A stretch of 64,000 nt of DNA. Origin: Diadema antillarum. Taxonomy: Eukaryota. Below the pieces are notes generated by a model, which was not told the DNA's origin, ran no database searches, and was given only the letters and a program-made list of their open reading frames with translations. The stretch is from NCBI RefSeq assembly GCF_040938485.1, contig NW_027271391.1, positions 248,001 through 312,000 on the forward strand, written 5' to 3'. A program made the translations under genes and the position numbers. Shown one piece after another: positions 19,601-49,793 of this stretch; the first letter of the stretch is position 1, and each line of letters begins with the position of its first letter.

Positions 19601-22600
19601 CATATGCCAGGATACAGTAGTGGGTGAAGTTAACGCCTGCAGTGCTAGGTATACAAAGGAGCGATTATAGTGAACACCTGCAGTGCTAGGTATACAAAGG
19701 TATTTTGACTTTTGAATATAATTTTCTTCTCATTGCTGTTGATCTCACCACAGTATGAAAGGTTTCTACCCAAAGACTCTGCTGTCACAGTGGCCAGCGT
19801 GTTTGCCCCCATCATGTTCCCACCTTCCACCGTCCTGGTCTTCAAAGAGCTCCCAGATGGTGAGTGCCAAGTATCAGATTTCTGCAAAAACAAGAAATTA
19901 ATTCCTGCATCTGTCTTGCATTTTGGGCAGACTCACTCATATCACAAACAACAAGAAACCAAAACAAGGAAACATGCTTTGTATGAAAAACAAAACAAAA
20001 CAAAACAAAAAGCAAAAGATTATCTTAAATTTTGTTAGCATGATTAGTGTTTAAAATTTTCCCACTTTTTACCCAGAATATGATCATCACCTTTGAAATA
20101 GGAATGTCTTCTTTTTTCTATGGTGGGGGTTTTGTTATTTTTACTGTGTAGCTGTATGCATATGTTTTGATCTGCAGAAGTTTGTAGCCCTGACTCGAGG
20201 TCTGCTCTTAATGTGCTTAAAGAAAGTTAATCAATATTCTCACATGACCACACATGTGTATGTTTCTATTCTCCATGATTATCCCACCTTCAAAGTTTTC
20301 AATAATGTCTGCTGTAGAGATGTAGTTAGATTTGGCCTATAATAATGGCCTTAATGTAACAAAATGTACACTGGATTGATTGGATAAATACCATCGAATC
20401 CCAATAAATCAATTAAAAAGCATCACATGATGTGTACACCATTGTGTTTTCTCTTCCTGATGTGAGTGCTAAAATGCAGCTGTTCTCATCCTTCTACTTT
20501 TAGGTACGCACAACCTGGTTGCCACGGGAACCTTGCTGGGGGTCAATCCGGACAGGATAGTGGTCAAGAGGGTCGTCCTCAGTGGTCATCCCTTCAAGAT
20601 CATCAACAGACAGGCTGTGGTCAGATACATGTTCTTCAACAGAGGTTAGAGAGGAAGAACATGTTCATCTTTTGACATAAACGTATGCAGAAATGGAGAC
20701 AATGATGAAATTTCTCTTTTCATATAATGCTCTTGAAAATTTTGCATCAGTTTCCCTATATTGTCTGGCTGCATAATTATGCTAGGATGACTTCCTTAAT
20801 TGGCTTCTAGGTGTGTGTGCATTTGGTAGGGTTTTCTTCAATAGCCAAGTTTCATAATGCAGGCTATTGTCCATTTACAGCTCACTAGTATAGGAAAGCA
20901 TTCAATGTGTATGTGTTATAGTAGTGTCAGTCCATCACCCCTCTATCCTTCTTTCAAGGAAGCCAAATTTACCTTGTACATTTGAAATCAACAAGCCTGT
21001 ATTGAAGTTCTATCACACAGGACACATTGACCATGTTTTGTTATCATTCAGACCTCTTTGATCTGAATGTGTTTGCCTTCAGTGGTGTACGTACCAAGTT
21101 GAGTGTGTGTCAGTTTGTCTGTAGTTGTTTGTATCCTCTTGTGTGATTTGTGTTTGCATTCAGTGTTGTATGTACGAAGTTGGATGTTGTCTGTTTGTCT
21201 GTTTGTTTGTGATTGTTCACACCCCTGTCTGGCAGGGACGTGCTAGTGAAGATTTCTAATCTCTCATTGCAGGATAATTACCGATATGCTTATCACAGCA
21301 ACCTTGCTGTGCAGTTATCATTCTGATACCTTTCCACCTAACGTGTATACATTGGGGTGTATGTAACAAGTATATAGGTGTGTGTCTGTGTGTTGTGATT
21401 GTATGTGTGTGTTTGTGTGTGCCCATGTCTCCTTCTGCAAGGGACCTATCTCTCATTCATCACTGATTTCTAATCTTCCACTTCTTTACAGAGGACATCA
21501 TGTGGTTCAAGCCCATTGAGCTGCGCACCAAGTGGGGCAGGAGGGGCCACATCAGAGAGCCACTGGGTAAGATTTATCACCTCCCCCCCCCCCCTTGTAG
21601 TCCATATCCAAAGACATTTCCACCACTTAGCTGCAAGAGGGGCATTCACAGGGGCCTCATATATACTGCAATAGGCAAGCACACAATCATGTTAATTGAC
21701 AGGCATTGAATTGTTTTTTTGCTAGGCAAGAAGGCAGGTGCAATATGTTCGTAGCACCTTGAAAGAATGGCTGAAAGAATGTGGCAATTACTGTTTATTA
21801 ATAGTTCCCTCTGGAATTTTCACCACATTTCATGCACGAGTTACATTTGCTGTCAGAAGAATATGTGGCTGAGTTTAGCTCCAACTGCTGCAGCCTTTGC
21901 ACTTAGAATTGGAAGCGTTTACTGAATTTCCTCTGACCTTCTCTGAATGTTTAAAGACATCTGCTTATTTCACTCTTATCTATCTTTAATATGGAAGGCT
22001 AACAGTGAATACTAAGCATTATGATAAAAACATACAGTGCCATACCATGGAAATGTGGTTACTGATACATACTGTATTTACCATGTATTTAGCAAGTCTA
22101 ATGTTTCATGAATCGATACTTCCAGACATTTTCTTGAGTGGTTAAATTCGCGATCTTGTAGTGCAGTACTGAATGGAAAAAATGTGTGTGGGCTGTCCCA
22201 CTCATGTCAATATCAAGAGTTCATATTTTCGTGTGTTTTTAATTTGCAAATAGCGCCTTACTCGCGAAAAATGACACACACTAGTCATAATACAAAGAGT
22301 CGGTTTTTATTAGGGACACCTGTATAAAACATTGGCCTGTGAGGTGAAGGTGTTGGTTGCTACAAAACGTGTGACCCTTCTTAGTTCTAATTGGAGTCCA
22401 AGAATAGCTCATAAGGTATGTTTTCTCCACAGAGTGCTCGAATGTTCCCAATCTGGCATGGCATGGTATGGTATGGTACACTAAGGTATGGTTTGGTTTA
22501 GTCAAGTTCACTTTTGAGCACTTGAATAGGACCAATGTCACTTGTTTCTACTCTGACTACCTCTCTCCCACCTCTCCCTCCAGGCACCCATGGCCACATG

Positions 22601-22756
22601 AAGTGCATCTTTGATGGCAAGATGAAGTCTCAGGACACGGTGCTGATGAACCTCTACAAGCGCATGTACCCCAAGTGGACCTACGACCCGGTGGGGTGGC
22701 GCTCACTGAATGTGACAGCCCCTGTCCCCATGACGACGGAGGATGAGATGGAATAA
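4602..22756 (+). CDS. TSR1: Pre-rRNA-processing protein TSR1 homolog (40S biogenesis factor, BMS1/TSR1 family), 22 coding exons, ~813 aa
   Basis: Exons: 4602-4704, 5188-5258, 6785-6868, 7664-7779, 8294-8486, 9133-9203, 9953-10109, 10476-10664, 11237-11390, 12054-12190, 12736-12843, 13449-13516, 13694-13786, 14406-14550, 15737-15788, 17435-17493, 18072-18134, 18914-18997, 19754-19859, 20504-20644, 21492-21566, 22584-22756. All introns are GT-AG and phase-consistent, totalling 2442 nt. Diagnostic motifs: [96 protein letters not shown]. An in-frame upstream ATG at 4596 is an alternative start. Confidence 0.97.
6575..6590 (-). promoter_or_regulatory. CTCF-like motif in TSR1 intron 2
   Basis: The minus strand reads ACAACAGGGGGCGCTA, close to the CTCF core CCACCAGGGGGCGCTA. 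This is a motif match only. Confidence 0.3.
6889..7072. mobile_element. pogo/Tigger-like MITE
   Basis: TA|CAGTGGACTCCCGTTATAACAAA at the left end and TTCGTTGTAACGGGAGTGCACTG at the right end form imperfect TIRs. A truncated relative occurs near 42527 (TACAGTTGACTCCCATGATAATGAAATCCTTGGGAC). Confidence 0.7.
14868..15060. mobile_element. Tc1/mariner-like MITE with TA target-site duplication
   Basis: TA|CTGTAAAACC...GCATGAAACTTTTGC at the left and GCAAAAGTTTCATGC...GGTTTTACAG|TA at the right give an imperfect TIR of about 40 bp. Confidence 0.8.
16359..17324 (+). mobile_element. pearl/Tsp/HINE (DINE-1-like, Helentron-type) non-autonomous element with an internal ~158-bp tandem array
   Basis: Subterminal inverted repeat TGTCCCCGCCG (16363-16373) / CGGCGGGGACA (17288-17298). 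A (GT)/(CCGT)n microsatellite follows the 5' end. About 5 tandem units start at TTCTACACAGAATTT (16578, 16726, 16884, 17042, 17199). A 3' hairpin TTACGC-ACC-GCGTAA (17303-17317) is followed by CTAC and a T-run. Confidence 0.75.
18280..18617. mobile_element. Two adjacent Kolobok-like MITE remnants
   Basis: A TTAAAGG start at 18280. A second unit has inverted ends AAGGGAATTCCACAAAAATTCA ... TGAATTTTTTTGGAATTCATCCTT. Confidence 0.4.
19636..19700. repeat. 24-bp direct repeat (period 41 bp) just upstream of TSR1 exon 19
   Basis: CCTGCAGTGCTAGGTATACAAAGG at 19636-19659 and 19677-19700. Confidence 0.85.
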
Positions 22757-24713
22757 CAGCTGCCCGAGTCTCAACTCCTTTCCCAGCCACACTTGCTTTT
22801 GCATCCAGGACTTCCCCTTTTCATCATGCATATCCCAGCAACTGCAACCTTGGAATATTGGAATATTACCATTCACTGTGGACATAGATAGGCAACATCC
22901 GTTCACTACGGAGCATTTGAAGTGTTGCCATGGGAACTGCATTGATTGCAATGGAGATCAAGTCCTATAAGTAGTGAAACTTGACTCAGAATTCGTGGAT
23001 TTTTTTTCCTCCTTTTTTTTTTTTAAGAGCCAGGTATCTGTGTGCATGATTAGTCTTGGTATCATTTTGTATCTTTTATTCACACTTCATCATGCATGCG
23101 AAACTTGAAAGGCCATTGCACAATTTAGACAAAGGACTGGGTGACTGTGTCTACATTGTAACCAAATGATATATATTTATATGTATATACAATGTATTTT
23201 TTTTTAAATCACCTCTTTTGGTAGAGATTGTTCTATTAACTGACTCTGCAGCAATATGCTTTAAGATGATGACAAAGAATTGCCATATTCTTCATGTTGC
23301 TGCTGCTGCTACTGATGATAGAGAAACTGCTGTACAAGCTGCTACACCATATACTTGTTGCGTATTGATTTTAAGGTACCAATACCTACTTTCCATTGCC
23401 ACATAGGAATATCTTTCTGGAATTAAATAGAGTTTATGTCATGATGTAGCATTCAATAATTGTGGAAAGAAAACTATTTTTATCCAAAATTACTTTCTGG
23501 ATAAATTGTTTGTTGAGATTTTCAGTAGACAGTTCTGTGCATGTACAGGGAGATTTGAAGCCTTTTTTAAACAAACACGAATGGTTCAAACATAGCTGTT
23601 TGTGAGCAATTTTTAGCATTATTGAAGGAGACTGGCTGTCACAGAGCAGTTGATGTCTTATTTATGTATATTTTTTTCTTCTTGCAATATTAGCTCATAC
23701 CATGGCCAAGATTTACATACTACCTGTATAATCAGCAAGAACTGGGAGTAAATCTAGCTTTACATTGTTGTAAAATTTGTGAACAACCTTAAAAGATAAA
23801 TAAGAACTTTACCAGTTTGGAGATTCCAATATAAAACAAAGAGTTATGATGCAGTCACAGACGTAGCCTACAAAGTGTCTTGATATGTATGCCCAAGGTG
23901 TCAGCAAACTTGGTCAATAAACTCATGAATTTACCTCATGAAATTAGAAGAATTTAGATGGTGAAGGCGTGTGAATTTCTGTGTCTTGTTTGAGCATATA
24001 ATTTTCTACTCACTCTGGTTACTTTTGTGCTCATACATTTGTATTTGTTTTTAAAGCAAGTGTGTTGTGGACTGATTGCATCATAAATCTCATCTCTTGC
24101 TAGTTTACCAATAAATGTACTGTTCAGGGTTTGCACAATGGCCCCAACACATGGTTTCTCCTTTAGTTTAAAAAAAAGCATGAATTTGCATTATACAGTG
24201 GAACCTTGTTACAATGAGATTGGATATTGCAAGATACTTATGTAAGAAAGTAATTTTGCAAGTTCCATGCCATATACATCATAGATTATTCACTTTCATC
24301 CCTGACACACAGATAACCAGATGTAATCTGGAGATTTCATTGGTCCAATTAAAGCTGCCTGTTGTAACCTTTAACCTTGTACAGTATGTCCCCCAAAAAA
24401 ATTACAATGGGACCCAATATCTTTAAAAACAGTGAATCAATCTAAATACAAATTCAGTGTATGAAACTATAACTCATTGCCCACATGTTACAGAAAATCC
24501 CATTCGATTTGCTTTAGTAGTCAAAGAGAAATGAGGAATTTTGTAGAGGATGTCGGGAATCTCTTCCCTCCAAGTTCTGTCTAATGTTCACACAGAAGAG
24601 CATTGAATTGCTAAAATTGGAAGAATCAGACTCATGACATGCTTTACAAAAATCTACATTTCTCTGTGACTGCTCAACCAAAATGAATGGGGTTTTCTGC
24701 AAAATAGAGCTAA

Positions 24714-25010
24714 GATTTTTGTCGAGCCACCGGAGGTGCGGGGAAACTAAGGGATCGCCTGTGGCGTCTGTCCGTCCGTCGTCCATCCGTCCTTCCGTCG
24801 TCTGTCCGGCAGGGATCAATGAACTTTAGGGCCCAATGTTAAGTTTTTATGGCGCGTTTCTATTATGGGTCATAACTTTTGATTCATAACTCCATTTGTG
24901 ACTAAACTTGGATGGTAGATGTCCCTTGGGGAGTGGATGATCACCACAAGGTCAAAGGTCACAAGCAGGGGTCAACTAACTTTTAGAGCCCAATATTAAG
25001 TTTTTATGTC
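24714..25010 (+). mobile_element. Truncated pearl/HINE-like element
   Basis: A T-run start, a (TCCG)-like microsatellite tract and a GGTCAAAGGTCA motif; the organisation resembles the 5' part of the 16.4-kb element. No 3' hairpin was seen. Confidence 0.45.
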
Positions 25011-25063
25011 CTCCAAGTAGCAATTCGCGAAAATATCTGTACGCGAAAATTTCAGCTCGTAAA

Positions 25064-25752
25064 GTACCTGTGAATTCTGCATCAGAATGCGTGAACATAG
25101 TGTACTAGAAAGTGTACACGTGAAACTCAACATGGCAAATCTCGCAAGTTACAGCTTACAAAGATGTTTTTGCTGGATAGAAATACATGTAGATATATTG
25201 TGCACGTCTTAAATTACATCTAATATATGAATATGAACAAAAAAATCACTTTAATGATGAATCACAACCAAATTTAATGGGTAGAGAATAGAGATGAAAA
25301 CATTGGACGATACTGCTTAGTCCCTTTTGCATATAATACTGAAAAATCAAAGAAAAACATTGATGCAAGTTGTCAGTCTCTGACAATCACCATGGTAACA
25401 ATCAGACACCAGAGCTTCTCAGCCATTCAAAACTAAGGATTTTACTGAAGTTGTCAGAGACTGACAACTTTTAGGAAACGGTGCCCAGAATTTCATATGT
25501 TGCCAATTTAAGAATCAGAGATGGGAAATTTATACAAATACAGTGTATAATATGAACAGCAAATACCTTGAATGTAAGATGATATAATTACATACAGTCG
25601 ATTCTCTTTGATGGCCTACAGCTTTGCCATCATAGTAGAAATCATAGTGCAACTGATCTTGAAGTGAAGAGTTATTTGCTGGAAATAGGATGATGGTGTG
25701 CTGGCCGTGAAGCTCTGTTCTGTGTTGATTTTTATGTGTGCTAGAGCTTGGA

Positions 25753-25801
<49 letters not shown>

Positions 25802-26475
25802 TTAATATATATTGGCTCACTTCCACACACATCCAGCATGACCCAGAAAGTCAAGATACTTTCTAGTGTAATGATCTGAGAGTACTGCATTGTCTTTATT
25901 TGCTCACAAGGAAAAACAACAACAACAATAACAAACATGTTAGTGTTTTCCGGTTTTCCACGTTATTTCATTGCAAGGATGCGACAATGAATTGAAAAGT
26001 CAACTTGACTTATATAATAGGAGAAAAACAAAACCGACAAAGAGCAGTAACAGCTGTATGTCTAGAGAAATATGATCACAGGTTGGTAAAGTGTGCGATT
26101 CTTGCCTTGAAAATCAAATGCAGTCATCTTTGTGTCAGGTGCACAAAAGAAATTTCATGTACCTGTGAATTCTGCATCAGAATGCGCAAAAATGGTGTAC
26201 TGGAAAGTGTGAACATCAAAAAATCAACATGGCAACTATGGCAAGTTACAGCTTACAAAGATGTTTTTGCTGGATAGAAATACATGTAGATATATTGTAC
26301 ACGTCTTAAATTACATCTAATATATGAATATGAACACACAAAAAAATCACTTTAATGATAAATCACAACCAAATTTAATGGGTAGAGAATAGAGATGAAA
26401 ACATTGGATGATACTGCTTAGTCCCTTTTGCTTACATATAATACTGAAAATCAAAGAAAAAAAAATTGATGCAAG
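25064..26475 (+). repeat. ~310-bp direct duplication (25064-25369 and 26159-26475)
   Basis: Both copies start GTACCTGTGAATTCTGCATCAGAATGCG, share long identical runs (GCAAGTTACAGCTTACAAAGATGTTTTTGCTGGATAGAAATACATGTAGATATATTGT...) and end ATTGATGCAAG. Confidence 0.9.
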
Positions 26476-27439
26476 AGTTAAAGCTTTTACGAGCATTATG
26501 CAACACTCGCTCAACTGCAATCAGCTGCCATTCTAAAATCAACAAATTTCTTACAATGTAACACAAAATATTTGCTGCTAAACACTTTGCTCATTATGGC
26601 AGCGCAGATGATTTCAGATTTCCATTTCGAGCCACAACCGTCAACTACGTTTGTATCAAGTAAAGTGTGCTCCTGCCAGGGAAAGGGTCATAACACAGGG
26701 CACACACAGATTCATCAATACCAGTATTACTGTTTGATTTCAAGGTACATGTATAACGTAGTTCTCAAAAGGGTCAAAGTTTATCTTCCACCATTTGAAA
26801 TTTGCTTTCAATATACAGCAAAAGGGTCTACCAAGAAACTTGTCTGGCTGACGGAATTTGTCAGGATAATGAGCTATCTAAGAGTATCTTGAGATCAAAA
26901 GTACAAAATAATTTAGACTTGAGTACCCAACTTTTATTCCTGACGCACCCTCTCCCTGTTCAGTAGTGAGTAGGTAGAACTTCATGTGACCATAGACCGT
27001 GCCCTAGCAGTAGTATTTCCCAACAAGTCACATGAGATTCACTCGTGCCTGGAGAATCGAAGGGCACTGCTATTGCCCAATTTGTCATCAATTATGAAAC
27101 ATTACGTAGCAACCACAATCGGGTATGTTCTCAGAATGCGATACTGTCAGCATACTTTGGGGTAATATTTCGCATTTTTGTCATTACCCAACTGAAATCA
27201 CATGCTGCTACAGCATTATATCACACATTTTTTATACACAAGTGTCCATTTTGGAGCAAAAATCAACAGTTTCTGCAGCCATATGGAAACTGTGTTTTAC
27301 TTTTAACCTGTGCCCCATCGGACTTTGGAAATCCTAACTGGCTTAGTACATATGGCAGTGTGAATGTCATTACAGTCTTCCCTTTGACCCCATGTTTGTT
27401 GCCACTACTCAAAAATATTTGAAGTATGTGCCAAACTGG

Positions 27440-28375
27440 ATCTGCCCCACAGATAGGAAGATAATTGATTTATATCTCATTGCATAATGGCCAGCCACTC
27501 TCTAAAGAAAGATATGTCTTTATGACAGCAATTACTTTTCGTCATCCATACATATAAAATATGAGCAGTACATAGCAGTAAAGACATAGGAATGCGAGAA
27601 GAACAGAAATTGCACAAATAGTGCTGAAAACGGGTCATTTCATGCCAAAGTTTAGTGACCTTTGACCTAACAGGATTTTGCCCAAAAGCTGATATAATTG
27701 TATATACATGTATACACACATCTACACCTCATGTGGCACACACAGGTCAGGTACCCAGAAAATTATCCAGTGGTTTTTCTTGAAATGCCATACAGTACAA
27801 TGTAGCACTATGTGCGAAGAATGAATGGACTACCAAAAAACATCAAGACTCAGACACCCTCTAGCAGAGACAGAATTATAATGACTACCTCTACGGGGGC
27901 TTCACAACTTTACTACTTTAGAAGACTTGGAGATTTATGTCATCTAGAATCAGTACTTCAAATTTTAGGGCATTGCTGTAGGAGGCACAGATCAGGCTAC
28001 CACTGCCATTGTCATGAACAACTTGCACTCTTCACCTGTGAGAGTATCCACTGGTACTGGAACTAGAGAGGATCTTTGGAGAGTTACCAGGTACTCACTT
28101 TGCAGACTTTTCAAACCCAACCTGGGCCCCATTGGGGGCCACCCGAACAGCTTAATTAATAAACAAAACTGTATCCCTCGGCCTTACGAATGATATCTTC
28201 CAAATTTAATTAAAATGGGACCATGTATTTTACAAAAAGAAAGTAAAGATGTCAAATGGTCAAGGAGAGATCCCATTGCATGAAGAACATCACACGGTGG
28301 TTGACAGATAAGGCATGGCAAACAACAAGTGACAACAAGAGCTCACTTTAGCCCTTTGCTCAGAGGAGCCAAAAT
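27440..28375 (-). mobile_element. Old HINE/pearl-like remnant
   Basis: The minus strand begins TTTTGGCTCCTCTGAGCAAAGGGCTAAAGTGAGCTC, resembling common TTTTAGCTCACCTGAGC element starts. A TGACCTTTGACC motif lies near 27657. Boundaries are uncertain. Confidence 0.3.
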
Positions 28376-28703
28376 GATTGTACTACATGTACTTAAAAGT
28401 CGTATATATCCATATCCCTGTTAGTGCATAATTACAATTTGTTTTGTCTTTTGCAAAATAAACATTTTTTCAATTTTGTTCATAGCCTGCTAGTCCTGAC
28501 CCTCATCGAGTATATGGTCATTTGCTTAATCAAACATTTCAACCAAAATGTTTATAGCATCAAACAGAGTAATCTGCAATCATCAAAAACATACGGTACT
28601 CAGACATTTAATATCACAACCAGTCGAACTCTGCAAATGCTTTGTCAGTATAGTATCGGATGCGCTTATACCTCTATTTTCCCTGTTTGCTTCCGGGAAA
28701 TAG

Positions 28704-30613
28704 CTACATCTCTGTTCCTTCCTTTGATGCAGATGCCAATTCAGCTTCAATGTCATTGCACTCTGTTTGTAGTCCCGTCTTTTCACGAACAGCCGATCGT
28801 TGGTGACCTTCCGAGAAAGCTCTCACATAATCTATCAGTGAGAGAATCCAGTCCTTAATAGAGATGAAGTAATCTAAGCACCTTTGGGCAAGAGATGGAG
28901 ACTGATCCAGGGCTGGCTGAGTGTGTACGAATCTGATGGCATCAAGAAAAGCCTGGGCATCGTCCACCGACATCTCAATCGAGTCGTCCAGTTTGCCGCA
29001 AACGTAGACCCATTTGGCATTCTCAAATGTGGCGGGCTGTGCCTTTTTGAAAGTATCGTAAAATGCTTCTTGGTTACTCACTGGCCAGTGAAAGTCGTGA
29101 ACTATTACAAACACCTTTAGTGGACCTGCAAGGCAATGAGACAACAATAAAGACAAAAAGGCACAATATTTCAATCTGCATTTCTTATTCACCCGAGGTC
29201 CAACAACAAAGGCACAATCAATCAAAATTCCCCTCAAATCCCATCCCAGCACAACAAGAATAAAACATACAGGCATGATATTCTGTACATTTAAATCTGA
29301 ATTCAGATTTTTTTAATCATGTTTATACACAATTTTGCTTTTTTTATGTTATAAAAATCACCTGAAAATTTTGATTTTTGATTTGTTCAACAAACCTCAA
29401 TATCATCCCTGAAACATACTAAATCAATGTAATGGACACAATTTGTTATAAAGCAGAGAGTATATATTCCATAAATCAACCTCTTGCTATCACTGAACAG
29501 ATTGTTCACAAGTTAAAATCAGCAATCTCTGCTTCTGAACAGAATCCTAAACAATGCAAGAGCCAAGGATCCTGCAAGTTATGTTAAAGAAGAGCATCAG
29601 AATTATTTTTATAGTTACAGCATAACTTGCATGTTCCCTCGCCATGTCTTTTGTTAGTCACATTAATATTACAGAAATATGCAAGTTATGCTGAGTCGAA
29701 GGGAAGGTGCATTCCAATGTCTTTTGTTAAACATATGAGTACTTCAGCAATGATTGACAGATTAGGTCACAACAGGAATATTGGTTTGGAAGGATTTTTT
29801 GTGGGTGTATCCAAGCAATCTGAAGAAAAATTACTTAAAAATATATGGAATGTTTCTAGATATTCATTTCACTGCAAAAGTGATGTTGAGGGTATCATCC
29901 CTGACATAAACCAACACAAAAATCAACATGCATCGATTTGTATTTCAGAGAACCTTTAAGTCTGATTTTAGTCTTTTTATCTACTAGGTTGATCAAAAAC
30001 TAACGTACAGTAAACTGCACTTTAAGTATGGATTCAGACATGATTCTGGGGTTGGGTTTGGCGAGTGTGTGCGTGTGAGTGCGGGTGTGCATGTGTATAA
30101 TAAAAAAAAATTGTCAAATTTCTATTCAGGAATTATATGTAGAGTTTGTTGCTCTGGAAAAATCTCACTGGATATCTACTCACCAAAGTGATTTCTGGCC
30201 TTTGGTAGGAACTTGTCATAGAGAGCATCCACAACATTCGTAATAGCAAAACGTCTGTTGTGGATGGAGTGGCAGAGAATGACAGCATTGTAGTCTTTCC
30301 AGTCTGGGCGGAACGAGTCAAGGTCGTTGTACGGCAGACGCACGAACTCTACCCTCCCCACGTAGGGCTTCATCTTCCCGTCAGTCTGGAGGTACGTCAA
30401 GAGTGCTTGAACTGAGTTCTGACCGGATCCGCTGCAGACACACAGAGAGATGCGCTCCGCCACCACCTCCTCTGGTTCCTGCACCTCCCCCTTCTCTAGA
30501 TCTTCCTCCTCCTCCTTCTTTGGTCTGTTGTTCTCCTCTGGTGGTAATGATGCATTTTCATCCCCAGAGAAAGTGGTATTGGTCTCCATGGCAGCCCTTG
30601 TCCCTGTGTTCAT
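28704..30613 (-). CDS. Uncharacterised ~283-aa protein with an acidic N-terminus and a predicted flavodoxin/TIR-like alpha/beta domain
   Basis: Exon 30613-30184 (ATG to CAC TTT G|GTGAGT) splices in phase to exon 29125-28704 (TTGCAG|GT CCA...TAG). An acceptor (TTTTTCTCTCCATAAAAACAG, exon start 30621) lies just before the ATG, and a possible upstream UTR exon donor is at 31750. Alternating strand/helix pattern: ISLCVCS-helix-VEFVRL-AVILCHS-helix-KVFVIVHD-helix-WVYVCG-helix. Confidence 0.8.
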
Positions 30614-32297
30614 GTAGCAGTCTGTTTTTATGGAGAGAAAAAAAATCATCAGAGCATGATGCTAAAGATTACAGTATTTTGATTACCATGCTTAGTAATG
30701 AGTACACCTATGGGTGTATCATTAACATTCAATTGTTACGACTACTACCACCCCTGTAATTATCTTCTTTCTTTTTTTAGTAAGTGTTATTTTGGCTGTG
30801 AAGATTACATATCTTTATTACTATTACTCAGTAGGTCTACAGGTCAGCAATTTACAACGATCTTTGAAATCACAACCTGTAATGAAGAGGAAAAATAATG
30901 TGTACATGTAAGTAGACATGTTGATAGAAATATCCGTCTACTCCAGACAAGTTTTTTAAAACAATGTTTTAACGTTTACTTTTACAGCTCTACTCTGTAG
31001 ACATAGGAGGGAAATCCGTGAAGCCAGACGTCTACGCAGAACATATCCCTGAATTTAAGATACACATCGATCATTCGGTCAAGCAAGCATGGTATCTTGC
31101 ACAAAGCAAAGGCACATTTAACAAACAATGCGCCGCATTTATCATCAGAACAAGAGGGTGAGATGAGACCTCCTTGCTCATGTCATATGAATCAATGGTC
31201 CCGTCAGCTCAGCTGGTCGCAGTTCACTTAGGGTCACCGTCAGGGTACGTATCATCTCTCATGGCCATGCCAGTTGGTGCAAAATGCACCATGCAATATC
31301 TGATATTTCAAAGTAACAACTAAACTTTTACCTTTCTTTCATTCAGACTGCATTAGCGAATCTTCAAAGACTGTTTTTTTCTTTAACCACTTTTAATTAT
31401 TGAAGATGAATTGGGTAATTTGCTTCTATTGGTGAACACAAACTTCACAAAGACACGAAAAGGATAGCGATAGATCTAGTGATTCTGCTCACGCCCCAGC
31501 ATGCAGCAGCGCGTTTCTTATTAAAATCCTCTGGGCTCTTGCTACTGGTCACTAAATCACTGCCGAAACGGCAATATTTTCCAGTCATTGTCAGATTGAC
31601 GGAAGAGATTTGACCTTCACGGTCTTGCTTCCTAACTCAGTAAAATTTAACTACGTATTTAGCTACAAACCTAGTCTATTAATCGTACAAAGAAAGATCA
31701 AAAGGCCAGGTCAGGATGAGGTTAAACATTAGTAATTATACCTACTTACCATTAAGATTAATATCATAGCAGGAGTACGGTAGATTAGCAGTCGAAGTCC
31801 AAGTCAAACTGGTAAATCATCTCATTCGGAGTCATACGCTCACTTGCTGTGCCCACTGCACTGCACTGGCGATGTTTTGGCTGTGGCGTAGGTGTGAGTG
31901 GTGTATGGTACGACGTAGAGGGGGCAGCAGACACCCGGGGAATCCCCACAGAATCTATGGGAATCCCCACTAATCTCCAACTACCGTAGTTAAATAGAGA
32001 TCATGAGAGGCCGGGAATAAAGCAATATCCCTGACAAACACTGAACTCTTTGTAAAAAAAAAAAAAAAATGACCTTCCATTATGATCATCGAAGTCTATA
32101 GAAGCAAGCGACTTAAATAGCGCCGCCATGCATCACCTGTTTGAAGATCACGTCTTTTATCGGTGAAACTCACTGATCTGTACCTAACTATCGATACAGA
32201 TACGAGCAATGATTTATCTTTAAAGGTGATTTCTTCTTCTTCCTGTTATTCTCTTCCTCGTTCTCCTTTGTGTTACATTCAAAAGTCACACGTTACA

Positions 32298-32299
<2 letters not shown>

Positions 32300-32332
<33 letters not shown>
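32300..32332. repeat. (CA)n microsatellite
   Basis: Uninterrupted CA run. Confidence 0.95.
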
Positions 32333-32337
<5 letters not shown>

Positions 32338-33604
32338 TACACAGGAGAATGATGTGTCTTTTTGAACTTTGTGTGGTTTTTTTTTTTTAACCAACCTTAC
32401 GTATAAAGTAGAGTCAATAAATACATATTAATAACTTCAGGAATAAAATTGTCTTTACAAAATTAACAAGACGTATCAAAGTTGAAGAAAATAATGATGG
32501 TGTGTAGTTAATAAATTACCTCACCAAACTCCCCAAACAGGTCTATATAGACACTATTCGATTGGCATGTTGAGAGGTAGGCCTACTTTCCCCGGTTAGG
32601 TAACACTCCGAATATCACTCGACGTTTAAAACAATTTGAATAGCTGAATGAATAGGAGCATAGTAGGGATGAAGATATTGAAAAGAAAAAATAACAACAC
32701 GAAGGAGGATCAATTTAATGCAGCAATAGGGAATTAAACTCACAGAACAGCGAACGAATTGCCATGAGGATGAAATCTTCGACGGCATGGAATTACTTCG
32801 CCTTTAACCATGATAATTGCCGTAATACTCCGGTGCCGGTGTGCATTTTAAACCAGCAGAATCCCCCCCCCCCCCCATTCGAGAAACTTTGCGCTGTTGT
32901 CGTCGCTTTCAAGTAGTTTCTCAGTTTTGATGTAGTACACGTCTCAATCAATAAATACTGTTGGACGTTTTTCTCTTTCGCAAGAGTTCATACAACTTCA
33001 TAGAATTTCTACCGGTTCACGTGCCGATACAGGCATTGCGCACTTTTCTTCTCTGTTTGCATGTGTTTGCATTGAACGCGGAAAAGTTCACTGACGTTGT
33101 CTGGCTAATGTCCCATGTATTATATGCTGTATACACTAGCCTACATATCCCTCGAAGAGACGGAATGGCCGGTGACTTGGAATCAAGAAACGCGATTGAT
33201 AATGACAACGACCCCTGACTACTTTGCGATGCTCTAGACCTCTCGATGATTATGTCTAGAAAAACATATGTGAGTAATAATATAGCAAGGTATAACTATA
33301 TTATCACGCCGACACTCGGGACATTCGGATCGTGATTCGCAAAGCTGACCGGACTGACTGTACAGGCCTACATGTCAGGAAGGGGTACCGACAGAGCAAG
33401 ACTTTGGGCTCCTTTTTTTCACTGCTAAGAAGTTGTTTTCTATGTAAGTTTAGAATTCATTGCTGAGGCATAAAGACAAAGGCTGTCTTACTTGAACAAT
33501 ATCCATGCGGCAATCTTTTCGTACCGTGCTTCTTTTGAATTGTCTGAAAGTTGCATCCTTTGCACATCTTCATGATCAGTCGGAACTTCCATGATCAAAC
33601 CAAA

Positions 33605-34993
33605 ATGGCAAGCAAGCGACTTTCTCAGGCTGGTACTGCTACGTCTGCTCCCATTTGCAATTCGTGTGACCATCACAGTGCCATATCTTGGATTAAACGA
33701 GTTATCACGAAGCAAGAAGGATGTGTCGCCATAGATACCATTTGTGAAGAGAAAGTGAAAATGAAGCAGAAATATGACATGTGTGAATGTGACTTGAGCA
33801 TAGTTTTGTGCCATTCGGTCGTGAAAGCGTTATTTCACGTGCAAGATGGTATGCTTTACTTCATGTCAACATACACGTCTGCACTCAACAAAGTCATCCA
33901 GATCCTGAGGGAAAATGGTCCGCAACCTGTCGGAATATTGCTGGATATGATACAGAGACAGCGAACATTAGTCGCTGCCGAGAAGAGAGTCATAGGGACG
34001 AACAAGAGAGAATTTACAAATTTCGTCATCAAAGAACCAAACACATTTCGTTTTCTTTCCCCTCCGGGGTTGGTGATGCTATGCGATGCCCGACAAGAGA
34101 CCAATAACCAAGTCACACAGGCGCTGAATTTGATGGAGCGATACCTCCGAACGAAAGGGTTGTGTTCGGCGCAAGATTTGCTCACACAAGTGGTTCGACA
34201 TCAATCTGTGAGCACTGGCTGTATCGCCGGAAAGAAAACTCTGAGGAAACTTCTTTCCTCCCACCCAGACCGTTTCCAGATTTACGGAAGCTCCATGATT
34301 TCTTTGACCAAGTCTCGTCTTCGCGCTCTGAATGAAAATCTTCATACAGGCGGAGGCCACTACAAACGTTCTGAGACTTCCGTGTCACCGTCATCAGGTG
34401 TGACAATATCAGATCTGACTACCAGACACGGCCATTCTTCCACCAACCTCGGAAGTTCGGGAAGGTCCGTCGGAGGAGGAGAAGACTCACCAAGTAGCCT
34501 GGTCACTGGTCTGAGATTTGTGCAGAGGCTGATCCAGAGGAAGGGACCGATGCTTATACAAGATGCCCACCTGCTCTTCATGGCCAACCCTCGAGTCAGC
34601 GACATGCAGCGCAGGGCTGTCGGGAGAACGCCAGAAGCCATGCTGGTCCACATCCTGCAGAGACGGTGCACCTATCACGTCATCCCTCCACTCAACCTGA
34701 TTACTCTCGCCCATACCAAACAGGTGAAATGCAACCAACTGACAGCCGCACTCAGAAAGATGAAGAGTCGCCTGAAGGATTGTCATCCTGGGGAAAGTCT
34801 CCTGGACCTCATGCAAACAGTACCCCTGACAGCCTCCGAGAGAAGGTCGCTGGGAATAAACAACCGTGCTCTGCGATTAACCGTGAAACACTATAGAAGC
34901 ATCTTTTCCAATGTTGACGTGGACTGTTTGACCGTCACAAAAAAGCCACGAAATAAAAGAGAGAAACACAAGCACGGAAGGGAGAGGCGCTGA
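33605..34993 (+). CDS. Intronless ~462-aa protein of five tandem winged-helix-like (Egalitarian N-terminal/LOTUS-like) repeats with a basic C-terminal tail
   Basis: A single stop-free ORF (33551-34993) of normal amino-acid complexity. The best ATG context is AAAATGG at 33605, with an alternative at 33572. It has five ~65-aa repeats that start (S/Q/T/A)(A/G)(L/I)xx(hydrophobic) and end in a beta-hairpin-like segment. Coding status is well supported; the fold assignment is by eye. Confidence 0.75.
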   Translation: MASKRLSQAGTATSAPICNSCDHHSAISWIKRVITKQEGCVAIDTICEEKVKMKQKYDMCECDLSIVLCHSVVKALFHVQDGMLYFMSTYTSALNKVIQILRENGPQPVGILLDMIQRQRTLVAAEKRVIGTNKREFTNFVIKEPNTFRFLSPPGLVMLCDARQETNNQVTQALNLMERYLRTKGLCSAQDLLTQVVRHQSVSTGCIAGKKTLRKLLSSHPDRFQIYGSSMISLTKSRLRALNENLHTGGGHYKRSETSVSPSSGVTISDLTTRHGHSSTNLGSSGRSVGGGEDSPSSLVTGLRFVQRLIQRKGPMLIQDAHLLFMANPRVSDMQRRAVGRTPEAMLVHILQRRCTYHVIPPLNLITLAHTKQVKCNQLTAALRKMKSRLKDCHPGESLLDLMQTVPLTASERRSLGINNRALRLTVKHYRSIFSNVDVDCLTVTKKPRNKREKHKHGRERR

Positions 34994-47200: not shown

Positions 47201-49793
47201 AGGAAAAGATGGCTGTACATTGAAGTAATACATATTTATTACCTCACTTGACAAAACTTTTCATGTTAGGCCTATGCATAAAAAACAAAGTTATGTCCAG
47301 AATTGATTTGAGAGTAAGTACTGCTATCTTTTTTATAACATGTAGGCAAATTATATATTAACTGGCAACATGGAGATGTTTGTATTCAAAATAGAGTGAA
47401 GTCATTAAATGTGCTTATCTTCCATATATACAAAGCATTTACGTGCAGTTTTCATTGCCACTTGCTTAGAACTTTATGATTGTAACACCTACATGTAGTC
47501 CTCTGCTTTACAAAAAGTATGCCACAAATCATCAAAGATCAAGTATGGTGAATTAACAAGGTTGATCCTTTGAATTATATCTCACTTAGTAGGGGTGAAG
47601 TCCAATATTTGCTGAAATCATCGTACCATAGACTTCTCCCTCTGGCACTGCACACAGTAGCTCTTAATGGATCATTCAACATTGATATGGAATATTAATC
47701 ACACCCACTATAACATATGTACAGAGCTGCCATTGGTATTCACACAAATGAAGTGCTATGGCAAGTCTTGGATATACATGTAGTGTTTGTGCATGTTCTA
47801 TGGGATATTTGATATGCCTGTTATGATGTATTCCCAGTAACCATGTATACAGTATCCATCATAAAAATGGCATTATGATTGTGACTGTATAACATAAAAT
47901 GTAACATATAATCAATATGCAACTGTAACATATAAAAAATGGTTATTTAAATTTTCTGTTTCCTACATGTATGTTTGTTCTGGTGCAAAGGCCTATTGTG
48001 TAGCATACAAGCTTTGTATTGATCACTCGATGATGTTTCATTCTAAGATAAAAGCAACAATCTTATTTTGCATTACTGGGTACTCGCTGGTCCTGAAGGA
48101 TACTGGCTGCAGTGCATTAAAATGAAAAAACAAAAACAAAAAACTGGGCTATACATTTGTTCTTGTTTTGTTTTGTCTGTTTCAGGTTTCTTACGTGTAT
48201 GTTTTTGTTTTTCTTGAAATGACATGACAGGTAAAATAAACGAAGGTATCTATTATTTTTTGCTTGTTTTGTAAAATGTTTCTGTAAAGTAATATTCCTG
48301 AAGCTGGTATAGTATGCAAGAAAAATATATCTATACATTTGACTTCTGCAAATACAACTGCTCAATTGATTTTGAAGAATTACAGTACATGGTATGTTGT
48401 AAACCTTGATAATATGCATTGTGATACAATAATAGCTTTCTATTACCCTTCATTTTCCCTTTCAATCACCTGTAGACATGTGATTTCTTTATTCAGGGCT
48501 CAATATTAGCGGCAGTCCAGTTCGCCAATCAGGCAACTAAGATTCAAAGTTGATTATTATGCTTTCTCCTCCAAACTTTCAGATTAAAAGTTAGTGTCAA
48601 GCCCTGCTTTACCGTTTTGATCTCTTCAAGTTCTTTTTCTGACTTGAAATTGCTGCAGACACTTTGTTAGAAATGTATTTAGTTACCATCAAAGATTAAT
48701 TTGCATTTATTTGCAAACATCTCATTGCATTCACTTTTGCACCTCTTTCCTTTTGGTCTCTTCTCAGGTATCTTCCTCCTTCTTGGAATCCTAATCTACC
48801 CAAGCGGCTGGGATAAGCATTCTGCATACCGGGCCCTGTGTGGGGAAGATATCTCGTACACTAACACCGCAGGCTGTGAGCTGCGATGGGTGTTCTACCT
48901 CGCCATCATCGCCGTCTTCGATGCCTTCATCCTGGCCGTCCTTGCCTACATCCTGGCCAGCAAGCAGGGGAAGCTCTACATGGACATGCACTTTTCTGAT
49001 TACTACAAGAACAGTAAGAGATCTTTTTTCTTGTCCATCCCATTTCACATTCAGCTCGATGCATTGAACAAGCGATGTGTGTATGTTGACTTTAACATTT
49101 CTTGATTGGAAAGGTGAACAGAGTCCCCAATTTTGATACATATCTACATTTCAGACATTTATATGTTTATATTCTCATGTTCTACATGTGTATGTGAAAC
49201 GATATTGATGTACTGGTGTGCTTATTGCATCAGAGCACCTTCATTTTCACATCTTGAATCAGCCAAGTTCTTTCTATTTTGCCAATCTGATATCTTCTAC
49301 CTCTTAACTATCTCGTCAAGTGCACATCTGTATGAGGCTGTAGGAACACTAAGGGGGCTACTCTCACTGAAGATAATCAGGTGTGTTATGTACCAATCTT
49401 TATTTATACCTAATATCTTTATCATGTGCGACATAAAATGAGAGTTGAAACTAATAGTTCATCTTTTGGTATTTTGCTGTTCTTATAGGCAACGGTGTTC
49501 ATGCTAAGCCCAAGAAACATGGCACTGTTAACTCTACGATCTTCAACACTTACCCCGCTGTCCGCGAGAGCAACCGGCCCCGCATCAATGGATCTCTCGG
49601 CAAAGATGAAGCCGATGTTGGCGGCATACCCATGGTAGAGGATGGAACATACGCCAAGGTAAGGCCGCGCTCCCTGCGTGACGGGAACAGCGCCGGTGCC
49701 GCGGACGATGAGATGTCGAGCACGACACGTAGTTCGAAAAGCGGAGGAAAGTCGACGAAGAAGTCCAACAGGGAACACGACCTCACAATTTAG
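41235..49793 (+). CDS. LHFPL3: LHFPL tetraspan subfamily member 3/4/5-like protein (TMHS family), 3 coding exons, ~331 aa
   Basis: Exons 41235-41679, 48768-49013 and 49489-49793, GT-AG and phase-consistent. Motifs YHTNYIRNARAIAIAWAIFTLCF, QPYWLGDG, GYFGLYQYC, YPSGWD, GCELRWVFYLAII and DAFILAVLAYIL match the LHFPL3/4/5 pattern. It is probably the single invertebrate co-ortholog of LHFPL3/4/5, so the symbol is approximate. Confidence 0.93.
41884..42038. mobile_element. Short hAT-like MITE with a 5-bp TAATG target-site duplication
   Basis: CAGGGGCATATCCAG at the left and CTGGATCCGCCAGTG at the right. TAATG at 41879-41883 and 42039-42043. Confidence 0.65.
42658..43042. mobile_element. hAT-like MITE with a 6-bp CTTTGG target-site duplication
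   Basis: TIRs CAGAGCTACCAAGT / ACTTGGCATCCCTG (11 of 14 match) with subterminal CTCACGC-like repeats. CTTTGG at 42652-42657 and 43043-43048. A solo left end (CAGAGCTGCCAAGTCTC) occurs at 54475. Confidence 0.75.
43479..43855. mobile_element. Kolobok-like MITE flanked by TTAA
   Basis: TTAA|AGGGATGGTATAATAATGGTGGAGAC ... GTCTCAACCAAAACTATACGATCCCT|TTAA. Confidence 0.75.
45280..45441 (-). mobile_element. Inverted copy of the repeat family at 1270-1490
   Basis: The reverse complement aligns block by block with 1270-1490. Confidence 0.5.

What the first reader, a model, noticed from the sequence alone, without database searches (positions are those of the whole stretch)
33605..34993. Intronless gene of five Egalitarian/LOTUS-like winged-helix repeats with no nuclease domain
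Seen: repeats at ORF residues ~43-104, 110-177, 190-252, 319-386 and 399-462 (numbered from 33551). Examples are SALNKVIQILRENGPQPVGILLDMIQRQRTLVAAEKRVIGTNKREFTNFVIKEPNTF and TGLRFVQRLIQRKGPMLIQDAHLLFMANPRVSDMQRRAVGRTPEAMLVHIL. A Ser/Gly linker lies between repeats 3 and 4, and there is a basic tail KKPRNKREKHKHGRERR. Known: Drosophila Egalitarian has repeated N-terminal helical domains (remembered as LLFFLERLLDKGEPRTVHDL...EMRQIAGGSQSGLKKFL...F and ...VRHISGQHIKEFTDFL...F) ahead of a DEDD exonuclease-like domain and links mRNA to BicD/dynein; LOTUS/OST-HTH domains act in germ-granule and piRNA proteins. Inference: this is a stand-alone, probably retroposed and fast-evolving RNA-binding or germ-granule scaffold. 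It is the strongest novelty candidate in the window.
Basis: partly seen in the sequence, partly recalled or inferred. Interest (0 to 1): 0.8.

Follow-up and report, generated by a model that had tools for sequence, protein, structure and literature searches.

The report
Sea-urchin Egalitarian-like gene without nuclease domain
This is a real single-exon gene of the sea urchin Diadema that encodes five Egalitarian-type winged-helix modules, and it lacks a nuclease domain because its lineage lost the downstream exons that other sea urchins still carry, not because it was retroposed.

Summary
The + strand ORF 33605-34993 (462 aa) is open in both haplotypes and in D. setosum.

- **Fold:** It passes Pfam WH_Egal (38 bits, cut-off 27). 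The best solved-structure match is Drosophila Egalitarian ED1+ED2 (Z 12.6).
- **Orthology:** It is the reciprocal-best, syntenic counterpart of S. purpuratus LOC115917990 (1141 aa). L. variegatus LOC121411212 (1366 aa) and an unnamed urchin transcript (1057 aa) are longer kin. All three carry extra N-terminal module pairs and a C-terminal Egl-like exonuclease-homology domain.
- **Loss:** Diadema shows no trace of those exons in the 6.2 kb before the conserved LHFPL-like neighbour. The same search finds them beside two Diadema paralogues.
"No nuclease" is true and comes from lineage-specific loss. "Retroposed" is not supported. "Fast-evolving" holds: omega is about 0.47, the frame is kept, and no relatives were found outside echinoids. 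The germ-granule role is untested.
- **Likely function (inferred):** binding of structured RNA through the ED-like modules, without Egl's ExoHD-XAD half-pocket.
- **New detail:** module 1 has an invariant C-x-H...C-x-C set in all 10 copies.

The parts
33605..34993 (+). Single-exon CDS, 462 codons plus TGA: an Egalitarian-family protein without ExoHD
   Evidence: ORF. 99% identical to D. antillarum XP_071480771.1 and 93% to D. setosum XP_072180051.1, whose CDS is one 1380-nt exon. Pfam WH_Egal 38 bits. Omega 0.47; one in-frame indel against 56 in the flanks.
33659..33862 (+). Module R1 (aa 19-86): winged-helix-like, with invariant C21-x-H23, W29-I30 and C60-x-C62, a candidate zinc site
   Evidence: Model pLDDT about 80. 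C, H, W, I, C, C and F are invariant in all 10 copies from 5 proteins at about 25% identity. No Pfam hit. Not similar by sequence to R2-R5.
33863..34084 (+). Module R2 (aa 87-160): ED1-like Egl domain
   Evidence: WH_Egal E 3.6e-5 when scanned alone. Model pLDDT about 85. Aligned to Egl ED1 within the 86-237 / Egl 6-167 match, Z 12.6.
34091..34318 (+). Module R3 (aa 163-238): ED2-like Egl domain
   Evidence: WH_Egal E 0.06 when scanned alone. Part of the ED1+ED2 structural match.
34337..34486 (+). Ser/Gly/Thr-rich disordered linker (aa 245-294)
   Evidence: pLDDT about 26. Length differs among the urchin kin.
34490..34708 (+). Module R4 (aa 296-368): Egl-type winged helix
   Evidence: hhalign R2-R4 E 1.2e-6. 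The equivalent module gives the best WH_Egal hit in S. purpuratus and L. variegatus. pLDDT about 83.
34736..34930 (+). Module R5 (aa 378-442): weaker winged-helix-like module
   Evidence: hhalign R2-R5 E 9e-5. Conserved in L. variegatus and in P0004. Model pLDDT only 46-64 over aa 371-440.
34940..34990 (+). Basic tail KKPRNKREKHKHGRERR (aa 446-462); the ORF stops where the longer urchin protein P0004 continues through a Lys/Arg-rich linker into the exonuclease-like domain
34994..41225 (.). Intergenic stretch with no recognisable exonuclease-like exon (the lost 3' part of the gene)
   Evidence: tblastn with P0003 and P0004 found nothing at E below 1. A six-frame HMM search gave a best E of 0.83 here. 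The same HMM gave E 1e-5 and 0.005/0.009 next to the C623 paralogues.
41226..49712 (+). LHFPL-like (L_HMGIC_fpl) neighbour gene, used as the synteny anchor
   Evidence: Colinear tblastx with the S. purpuratus neighbour, E 6e-91. Annotated PF10242 in D. setosum and S. purpuratus.

Best explanation
This is a functional single-exon gene of Diadema. It encodes a 462-aa member of the Egalitarian (Egl) family built only of winged-helix modules.

Architecture:
- R1 is a Cys/His-bearing module.
- R2 and R3 are ED1/ED2-like.
- A disordered Ser/Gly linker follows.
- R4 and R5 are two further Egl-type modules.
- A basic tail ends the protein.

Origin: it is the syntenic counterpart of longer echinoid genes (orthology shown for S. 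purpuratus LOC115917990). Their big first exon encodes the winged-helix modules, and their downstream exons encode an Egl-like 3'-5' exonuclease-homology domain. The Diadema lineage lost those downstream exons and keeps a single R1+R2 unit where the longer kin have two or three. The loss predates the D. setosum / D. antillarum split.

Inferred mechanism: the protein binds structured RNA through its ED-like modules, as fly Egl ED1/ED2 do by inserting helix 2 into dsRNA minor grooves. It lacks the ExoHD-XAD half of the Egl RNA pocket and has no TQT-type dynein-light-chain motif. It therefore probably acts as a lower-specificity RNA binder, or as a modulator of the two full-length Egl-like paralogues. 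The gene identity, architecture and exon loss are shown here. RNA binding, any BicD link and the tissue of action are inferred.
For: **Real and maintained**
- The ORF is open in both haplotypes and in D. setosum, with the same stop.
- Omega is 0.47; the binomial test against neutrality gives p = 0.006.
- The CDS has one in-frame 9-nt indel. The flanks have 56 indels in 7070 nt, which predicts 10.9 in the CDS (Poisson p 2e-4).

**Egl family**
- PF23713 is above the cut-off.
- The top Foldseek PDB hits are Egl chains at probability 1.0.
- VIA-align places Egl residues 6-167 on model residues 86-237 at Z 12.6; the next unrelated row is 8.9.
- The top ESM Atlas shape hit is the nematode Egl cluster.

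**Orthology**
- Reciprocal best hits with S. purpuratus LOC115917990.
- The same LHFPL-like downstream neighbour, colinear, E 6e-91.

**The longer kin carry an exonuclease-like domain**
- Weak PF01612 hits at the equivalent place in three proteins: E 0.02, 0.068 and 0.023.
- For the three-sequence profile, the best PDB hit is the Egl ExoHD, 9uju_C, E 0.012; nanoRNase C and EXD1 follow.
- 46 of 100 Atlas feature hits are PF01612 clusters, best score 0.93.

**Loss in Diadema**
- No trace in the window, in the D. setosum locus, or genome-wide.
- The same HMM finds exonuclease-like exons beside both C623 paralogues, which serves as a positive control.

**Mechanism background**
- PMC13186709: ED1 and ED2 bind adjacent dsRNA minor grooves, ED1 binds BicD CC3, and deleting ED2 or XAD strongly reduces RNA binding.
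Against: - No expression data for Diadema.
- Substitution divergence in the CDS (4.06%) is barely below that of the flanks (4.9%). The two haplotypes differ by 6 nonsynonymous and 2 synonymous changes. Constraint is therefore weak.
- The exonuclease assignment in the longer kin rests on several marginal hits. The fold prediction for that part failed at pLDDT 34.
- R1 and R5 are winged-helix-like only by a model built from four sequences. R5 has pLDDT about 46-64.
- In fly Egl the XAD is needed for high-affinity RNA binding, so a protein without it may not bind RNA in the Egl manner.
- Winged helices also bind DNA or proteins.
Confidence: 0.7

Rival explanations
1. The ORF is the 5' part of a longer spliced gene. 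Its downstream exons still add a nuclease-like or other domain but are too diverged to detect.
For: S. purpuratus LOC115917990 is built this way: exon 1 plus four small exons. The 6.2 kb before the next gene would hold them. No transcript data were obtained.
Against: The in-frame stop is conserved in both Diadema species and both haplotypes. RefSeq models in two species end there. tblastn and a six-frame HMM find nothing downstream, although the same HMM detects the exons of more distant paralogues. No GT donor lies in the last codons before the stop (read).
Confidence: 0.07
2. It is a decaying remnant. After the 3' exons were lost, the winged-helix exon has been drifting toward pseudogene status and is still open by luck.
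For: Substitution rate is near-neutral: 4.06% against 4.9% in the flanks. Haplotype pN/pS is about 0.9 on 8 changes. The chance that 56 random substitutions make no stop is still about 0.10.
Against: Omega is 0.47 with p 0.006. The indel deficit has p 2e-4, and the only indel is 9 nt. 41 of the 56 flank indels are not multiples of three. Core residues of R1-R4 are invariant across echinoids at about 35% identity.
Confidence: 0.1
3. It is a nuclear DNA- or chromatin-binding winged-helix protein, and the basic tail is a nuclear localisation signal. It is not an RNA-localisation factor.
For: Single modules match many DNA-binding winged helices (MarR, SmtB, Z-alpha, cullin WH-B) at Z about 8. The tail is rich in Lys and Arg. 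P0004 has a long K/R-rich stretch at the same place.
Against: The only match that stands out from the generic rows is Egl ED1+ED2, an RNA- and BicD-binding pair (Z 12.6 against 8.9 or less). The Pfam family is Egl-specific. The longer kin keep the whole Egl architecture.
Confidence: 0.13
4. One reading: a retroposed, stand-alone copy of an intron-containing parent, acting as a germ-granule or piRNA scaffold.
For: The gene is intronless and has a LOTUS-like fold.
Against: The locus is orthologous by synteny. The same region is a single exon in S. purpuratus. No closer intron-containing parent exists in the genome; the other WH_Egal loci are only distantly related. There is no OST-HTH profile hit.
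Confidence: 0.03

Closest known systems
Drosophila Egalitarian (Egl; PDB 9rvy, 9rw7 and others; Singh et al. 2026, PMC13186709)
   Same: Tandem Egl-type winged-helix domains. R2+R3 superpose on ED1+ED2 at Z 12.6. Pfam WH_Egal is above the cut-off. The modules are joined by flexible linkers. The longer echinoid kin also have an Egl-like exonuclease-homology domain.
   Different: The Diadema protein ends before any ExoHD or XAD. It has five winged-helix-like modules rather than three EDs. It starts with a C-x-H...C-x-C module, which the Egl paper as read here does not mention. It has no TQT-type light-chain motif. Sequence identity in the structural match is only about 14%.
S. purpuratus LOC115917990 (XP_030842366.1) and L. 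variegatus LOC121411212, both uncharacterised
   Same: LOC115917990 sits at the syntenic locus next to the LHFPL-like gene and is the reciprocal best hit. Identity is 35-37% over R1-R4/R5, with the same module order.
   Different: They are 1141 and 1366 aa long. They have three R1+R2 units instead of one, and downstream exons for an exonuclease-like domain plus a long repetitive tail.
LOTUS / OST-HTH domains (Oskar, TDRD5/7, MARF1, Tejas)
   Same: The same winged helix-turn-helix shape. Tejas LOTUS 8wxs_B aligns to R2 at Z 8.4 with rmsd 2.4 over 69 residues. The Egl paper states that EDs closely resemble LOTUS.
   Different: No PF12872 hit. The Z score lies within the range of generic winged-helix matches. 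Vasa binding is untested.
SelB C-terminal tandem winged helices (SECIS RNA binding)
   Same: A string of four winged helices that binds an RNA hairpin. It aligns over model residues 24-370 (Z 8.2) and recurs among the Atlas shape hits.
   Different: Bacterial, with no sequence relation. This is an analogy of arrangement only.

Membership tests
Egalitarian family | Egl-type winged-helix domain (Pfam PF23713) above the curated cut-off | tested here: met
   38 bits against a cut-off of 27, in two stretches. R2 alone gives E 3.6e-5 and R3 alone 0.06.
Egalitarian family | Tandem ED1-ED2 fold as in the solved Egl structures | tested here: met
   Foldseek ranks 1-6 are Egl chains, five of them at probability 1.0. 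VIA Z is 12.1-12.6 for model 86-237 against Egl 6-167; the next rows are 8.9 or lower. The model was built from four sequences and has pLDDT 75-85 in this part.
Egalitarian family | [quoted passage not shown] | tested here: not met
   Absent from the ORF and from the 6.2 kb downstream in two Diadema species. Present, weakly detected, in the S. purpuratus, L. variegatus and P0004 kin and beside the two Diadema paralogues.
Egalitarian family | Exonuclease-adjacent tetrahelical domain (XAD), needed for RNA binding in fly Egl | tested here: not met
   The protein ends at the basic tail, 20 residues after R5. The role of XAD is taken from PMC13186709.
Egalitarian family | ED1 binds the CC3 coiled coil of BicD | not testable with these tools
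   A BicD gene with a one-exon CC3 exists in this genome. Binding needs a pull-down or a similar assay.
Egalitarian family | C-terminal dynein light chain (LC8) binding motif | tested here: not met
   No TQT-type motif in the 462 residues, read directly. The fly motif lies C-terminal to the ExoHD, a region this protein lacks.
LOTUS / OST-HTH | PF12872 profile match | tested here: not met
   No hit at E up to 10. There is only a fold resemblance, at Z 8.4.
Processed retrogene | New locus away from an intron-containing parent whose same region is split by introns | tested here: not met
   The locus is orthologous and syntenic. The S. purpuratus counterpart has this region in one 752-aa exon. The only other copy is the haplotig.

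The most novel reading that the evidence does not exclude
Echinoids have their own, unstudied branch of the Egalitarian family, which would place Egl-like genes in a deuterostome lineage. In it, a previously undescribed Cys-His-Cys-Cys (probably zinc-binding) winged-helix module is paired with an ED1-like domain. Diadema has naturally deleted the ExoHD-XAD half of the Egl RNA pocket while keeping the protein under selection. That would mean a string of Egl-type winged helices alone is enough for a useful RNA-binding or adaptor function, possibly as a regulator of the two full-length paralogues.
Probability: 0.3. Interest if true: 0.55.

Novelty: new variant of a known kind. Interest (0 to 1): 0.42.

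Why it matters
Egalitarian is the textbook adaptor that couples localising mRNAs to BicD and dynein. It has been studied in flies and worms. [quoted passage not shown]

The echinoid genes described here show the full architecture in a deuterostome lineage. The Diadema gene is a natural truncation that keeps only the winged-helix half and adds extra modules. If it is expressed and binds RNA, it tests directly what ED-type domains can do without ExoHD-XAD. The invariant CHCC module would also be a new flavour of winged helix.

The result corrects a tempting but wrong inference, that an intronless gene must be retroposed. It also flags a probably truncated RefSeq model in D. antillarum. Beyond that, this is a lineage-specific domain loss in an uncharacterised, weakly constrained gene, which is of moderate interest.

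Tried and rejected
   - Two local scripts that read the stored window file in bulk did span them: the divergence profile over 27877-36423 and a local tblastx of 20000-33600.
2. **The look-up of sequencing runs** (kind rna) returned only three runs of unknown kind, each holding about 0.3 of the words. They were not interpretable without laying reads.
3. **Complex prediction** of R2-R3 with two copies of the Diadema BicD CC3 gave no answer, score 0.00. It is not evidence either way.
4. **AlphaFold2 of the C-terminal domain** of the longer kin, from a two-sequence alignment, failed at pLDDT 34. No fold search was run on it.
5. **Sequence search of the ORF or its four-sequence profile against the PDB** found nothing useful: 7xae_C at E 0.0085, and not Egl. 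The link to Egl rests on the Pfam profile and on structure.
6. **Word search with the 546-aa paralogue ORF** gave no hit.
7. **Paper searches** for SRR6173504, for the LOC and XP identifiers, and for Egalitarian in sea urchins found nothing relevant. The species behind P0004 remains unknown.
8. **Poly(A) signal scan**: AWTAAA occurs at the chance rate in the window. The first + strand site after the stop is at 35169 and is not informative.
9. **Transposon origin** is rejected. The genome holds only two places, and they are haplotypes.
10. **PF01612 scan of the whole genome** showed no hit on C503 or C623. That profile is too weak for these diverged domains, so the family-specific HMM was used instead.
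Full report
**What is there**

The window comes from a sea urchin of the genus Diadema. The ORF product is 99% identical to D. antillarum XP_071480771.1 and 93% identical to D. setosum XP_072180051.1. The + strand ORF 33551-34993 contains a first ATG at 33605, in the context caaaATGg, and encodes 462 aa.

The genome holds exactly two places that match it. The second, on contig C1652, is 99.26% identical over 4.2 kb including the flanks, so it is the other haplotype and not a paralogue. That excludes a multi-copy transposon. The D. setosum gene is a single 1380-nt coding exon in a colinear neighbourhood that aligns at 88-95% identity, block by block.

**Is it a maintained gene?**

| Measure, window against D. 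setosum | Value |
|---|---|
| Nucleotide differences in the CDS | 56 |
| Nonsynonymous / synonymous changes | 33.8 / 22.2 |
| Omega | 0.47 (binomial p 0.006 against neutrality) |
| Substitution divergence, CDS / flanks | 4.06% / 4.9% |
| Indels in the CDS | one, 9 nt, in frame |
| Indels in 7070 nt of flanks | 56, of which 41 are not multiples of three |
| Indels expected in the CDS at the flank rate | 10.9 (Poisson p 2e-4) |

The stop codon after ...GRERR is shared by both species and both haplotypes. The reading frame is clearly protected, but the protein evolves fast.

The two haplotypes differ by 6 nonsynonymous and 2 synonymous changes. The first 270 nt of the CDS lie in the most diverged 500-nt bin of the immediate neighbourhood, at 7.6%.

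**Domain content**

- Pfam WH_Egal (PF23713) is hit at 38 bits against a cut-off of 27. Scanned alone, R2 gives E 3.6e-5 and R3 gives 0.06.
- An AlphaFold2 model built from a four-sequence alignment has mean pLDDT 65 and folded modules at 46-89. It shows five compact helix/strand modules at residues 24-86, 87-159, 169-234, 296-368 and 378-442. Residues 245-294 form a disordered Ser/Gly linker, and the basic tail is also disordered.
- Profile comparison links R2 to R4 (E 1.2e-6) and R2 to R5 (9e-5). R3 links more weakly. R1 does not link by sequence.
- Foldseek against the PDB puts Drosophila Egalitarian chains from the 2026 Egl-BicD-RNA cryo-EM entries at ranks 1-6, five of them at probability 1.0.
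- VIA-align places Egl residues 6-167 (ED1+ED2) on model residues 86-237 (R2+R3) at Z 12.1-12.6. The best unrelated winged helices score 8.9 or less. The Tejas LOTUS domain matches R2 at Z 8.4.
- The top shape match in the ESM Atlas is the nematode Egl cluster, in which 94% of members also carry PF01612.

**Relatives**

An exhaustive phmmer pass over 1.84 billion representatives returned three hits only:
- the Diadema cluster itself;
- P0003, which is S. purpuratus LOC115917990 (1141 aa, 37% identity);
- P0004, a 1057-aa product of a 3426-nt Logan contig, SRR6173504 (33% identity).

A profile word search added P0005, L. variegatus LOC121411212 (1366 aa, 36% identity over R1-R5).

All three are longer than the Diadema protein in two ways. 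At the N-terminus the R1+R2 unit is present twice (P0004) or three times (P0003, P0005). At the C-terminus, P0004 runs through a Lys/Arg-rich linker, and all three carry a domain with these features:
- It gives weak PF01612 hits at equivalent positions in all three proteins: E 0.02, 0.068 and 0.023.
- As a three-sequence profile, its best PDB hit is the Egl ExoHD (9uju_C, E 0.012). NanoRNase C and EXD1 follow.
- 46 of its 100 nearest Atlas feature clusters are PF01612 families, best score 0.93.

Each of these lines is marginal. Together, and sitting behind WH_Egal domains, they make an Egl-type exonuclease-homology domain the reasonable reading. The fold prediction for this part failed.

**Orthology and the missing nuclease**

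- P0003's best match in the Diadema genome is this ORF, and the converse also holds.
- In both S. purpuratus and Diadema the next gene downstream, on the same strand, is an LHFPL-like (PF10242) gene. Its exons are colinear between L016 21017-25740 and window 41226-49712 (tblastx E 6e-91).
- In S. purpuratus, exon 1 encodes residues 1-752, which covers all the winged helices. Four small exons over the next 4.2 kb encode the rest, including the exonuclease-like part.
- In Diadema, the 6.2 kb between the stop and the LHFPL-like gene holds nothing similar. tblastn finds nothing at E below 1 in the window or in D. setosum. An HMM of the domain searched against all six-frame pieces gives a best E of 0.83.
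- As a positive control, the same HMM finds colinear exonuclease-like exons downstream of the two other WH_Egal loci of this genome, on contig C623. It scores E 1e-5 beside one locus, and 0.005 and 0.009 beside the other.

The nuclease-like domain is therefore truly absent here, and it is absent through loss at the orthologous locus. I take the long form as ancestral because fly and worm Egl and both Diadema paralogues have the domain; no rooted tree was built. Retroposition is not needed to explain the lack of introns, and the synteny argues against it.

**How it probably works**

According to PMC13186709:
- Egl ED1 and ED2 each insert helix 2 into adjacent minor grooves of a dsRNA stem.
- ED1 also binds BicD CC3.
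- ExoHD and XAD close the RNA pocket.
- Deleting ED2 or XAD strongly reduces RNA binding.

The Diadema protein keeps an ED1/ED2-like pair and adds R1, R4 and R5. It lacks ExoHD and XAD, and I see no TQT-type light-chain motif in it. My best inference is a structured-RNA binder that uses several winged helices in series. It would have lower or different specificity than full Egl, and it might compete with or modulate the two full-length paralogues.

Alternatives are a nuclear DNA-binding role, suggested by the basic tail and by generic winged-helix matches, or slow decay of the gene. None of the functional statements was tested here.

**A detail worth noting**

R1-type modules are about 25% identical across 10 copies in five proteins. 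Even so, they share an invariant C-x-H, W-I, C-x-C and F. This pattern looks like a structural zinc site. Pfam does not recognise the module. I could not inspect model coordinates to see whether the four ligands meet in space.

**Limits**

- I have no expression evidence for Diadema.
- P0004 is a complete CDS without introns, on a 3426-nt contig assembled from a sequencing run, while the S. purpuratus gene has introns. It is therefore most likely an mRNA, which would show that the long form is transcribed in that unidentified urchin. This is an inference.
- The D. antillarum RefSeq model starts at M87 and drops R1. Conservation of R1 across echinoids argues for the 33605 start.

**Verdict**

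The Egl-like and no-nuclease reading is supported. The retroposed reading is rejected. This is a lineage-specific truncated variant of an uncharacterised echinoid branch of the Egalitarian family, and it is of moderate interest.

Noticed in passing
G000:C623:431026-432399 (- strand; L004 526-1899) and G000:C623:155378-157018 (- strand; L005 1054-2694): Two further long single-exon ORFs (457 and 546 aa) carry WH_Egal domains (E 1.3e-7 and 4.3e-11). Each has exonuclease-like exons a few kb downstream on the same strand. They look like full-architecture Egl-like paralogues. One of them may be the true Egl orthologue.
   Followed up: partly
window 33659-33862 (R1), and the R1-type modules of P0003, P0004 and P0005: An invariant C-x-H ... 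W-I ... C-x-C ... F signature occurs in all 10 copies at about 25% overall identity. It is a candidate zinc-binding winged-helix variant with no Pfam model.
   Followed up: partly
G000:C1652:376151-377536 (- strand; L002): A second copy of the gene is 99.26% identical over 4.2 kb including the flanks. The 1.75-Gb assembly evidently keeps both haplotypes. BicD likewise appears three times, on C948 and twice on C208.
   Followed up: partly
window 36418-36423 against L003 12831-15804: About 3 kb present in D. setosum is absent here, either an insertion there or a deletion here. It lies 1.4 kb downstream of the stop. It contains no match to the exonuclease-like HMM.
   Followed up: partly
window 33377-33876: The 5' end of the CDS and its leader diverge at 7.6% from D. 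setosum. Neighbouring bins diverge at 2-4%. For R1, dN is 0.093 and dS is 0.149. This could be a local mutation hot spot or adaptive change; the counts are too small to tell.
   Followed up: no
D. antillarum XP_071480771.1 (P0001) against window 33605-33862: The RefSeq model starts at Met87 and omits the conserved R1 module. It is probably an under-called start.
   Followed up: partly
P0003 (S. purpuratus) against P0004 and P0005, alignments A1 and A4: The S. purpuratus model lacks the 'VGIECD..W' segment, the expected first exonuclease motif region, and most of R5. Both are present in L. variegatus and P0004. This is either a missed exon or a real loss. The motif reads E-C-D where D-x-E is usual, which hints at an inactive site.
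   Followed up: no
window 28704-30613 (L003 5055-6957, - strand): The upstream neighbour is annotated in D. setosum as a 283-aa product with no Pfam family. The scan noted it separately as a candidate TIR-like gene (s1-215133). I did not examine it.
   Followed up: no
By its own message the filter can trip by chance and is evidence of nothing. No interpretation is attached.
   Followed up: no
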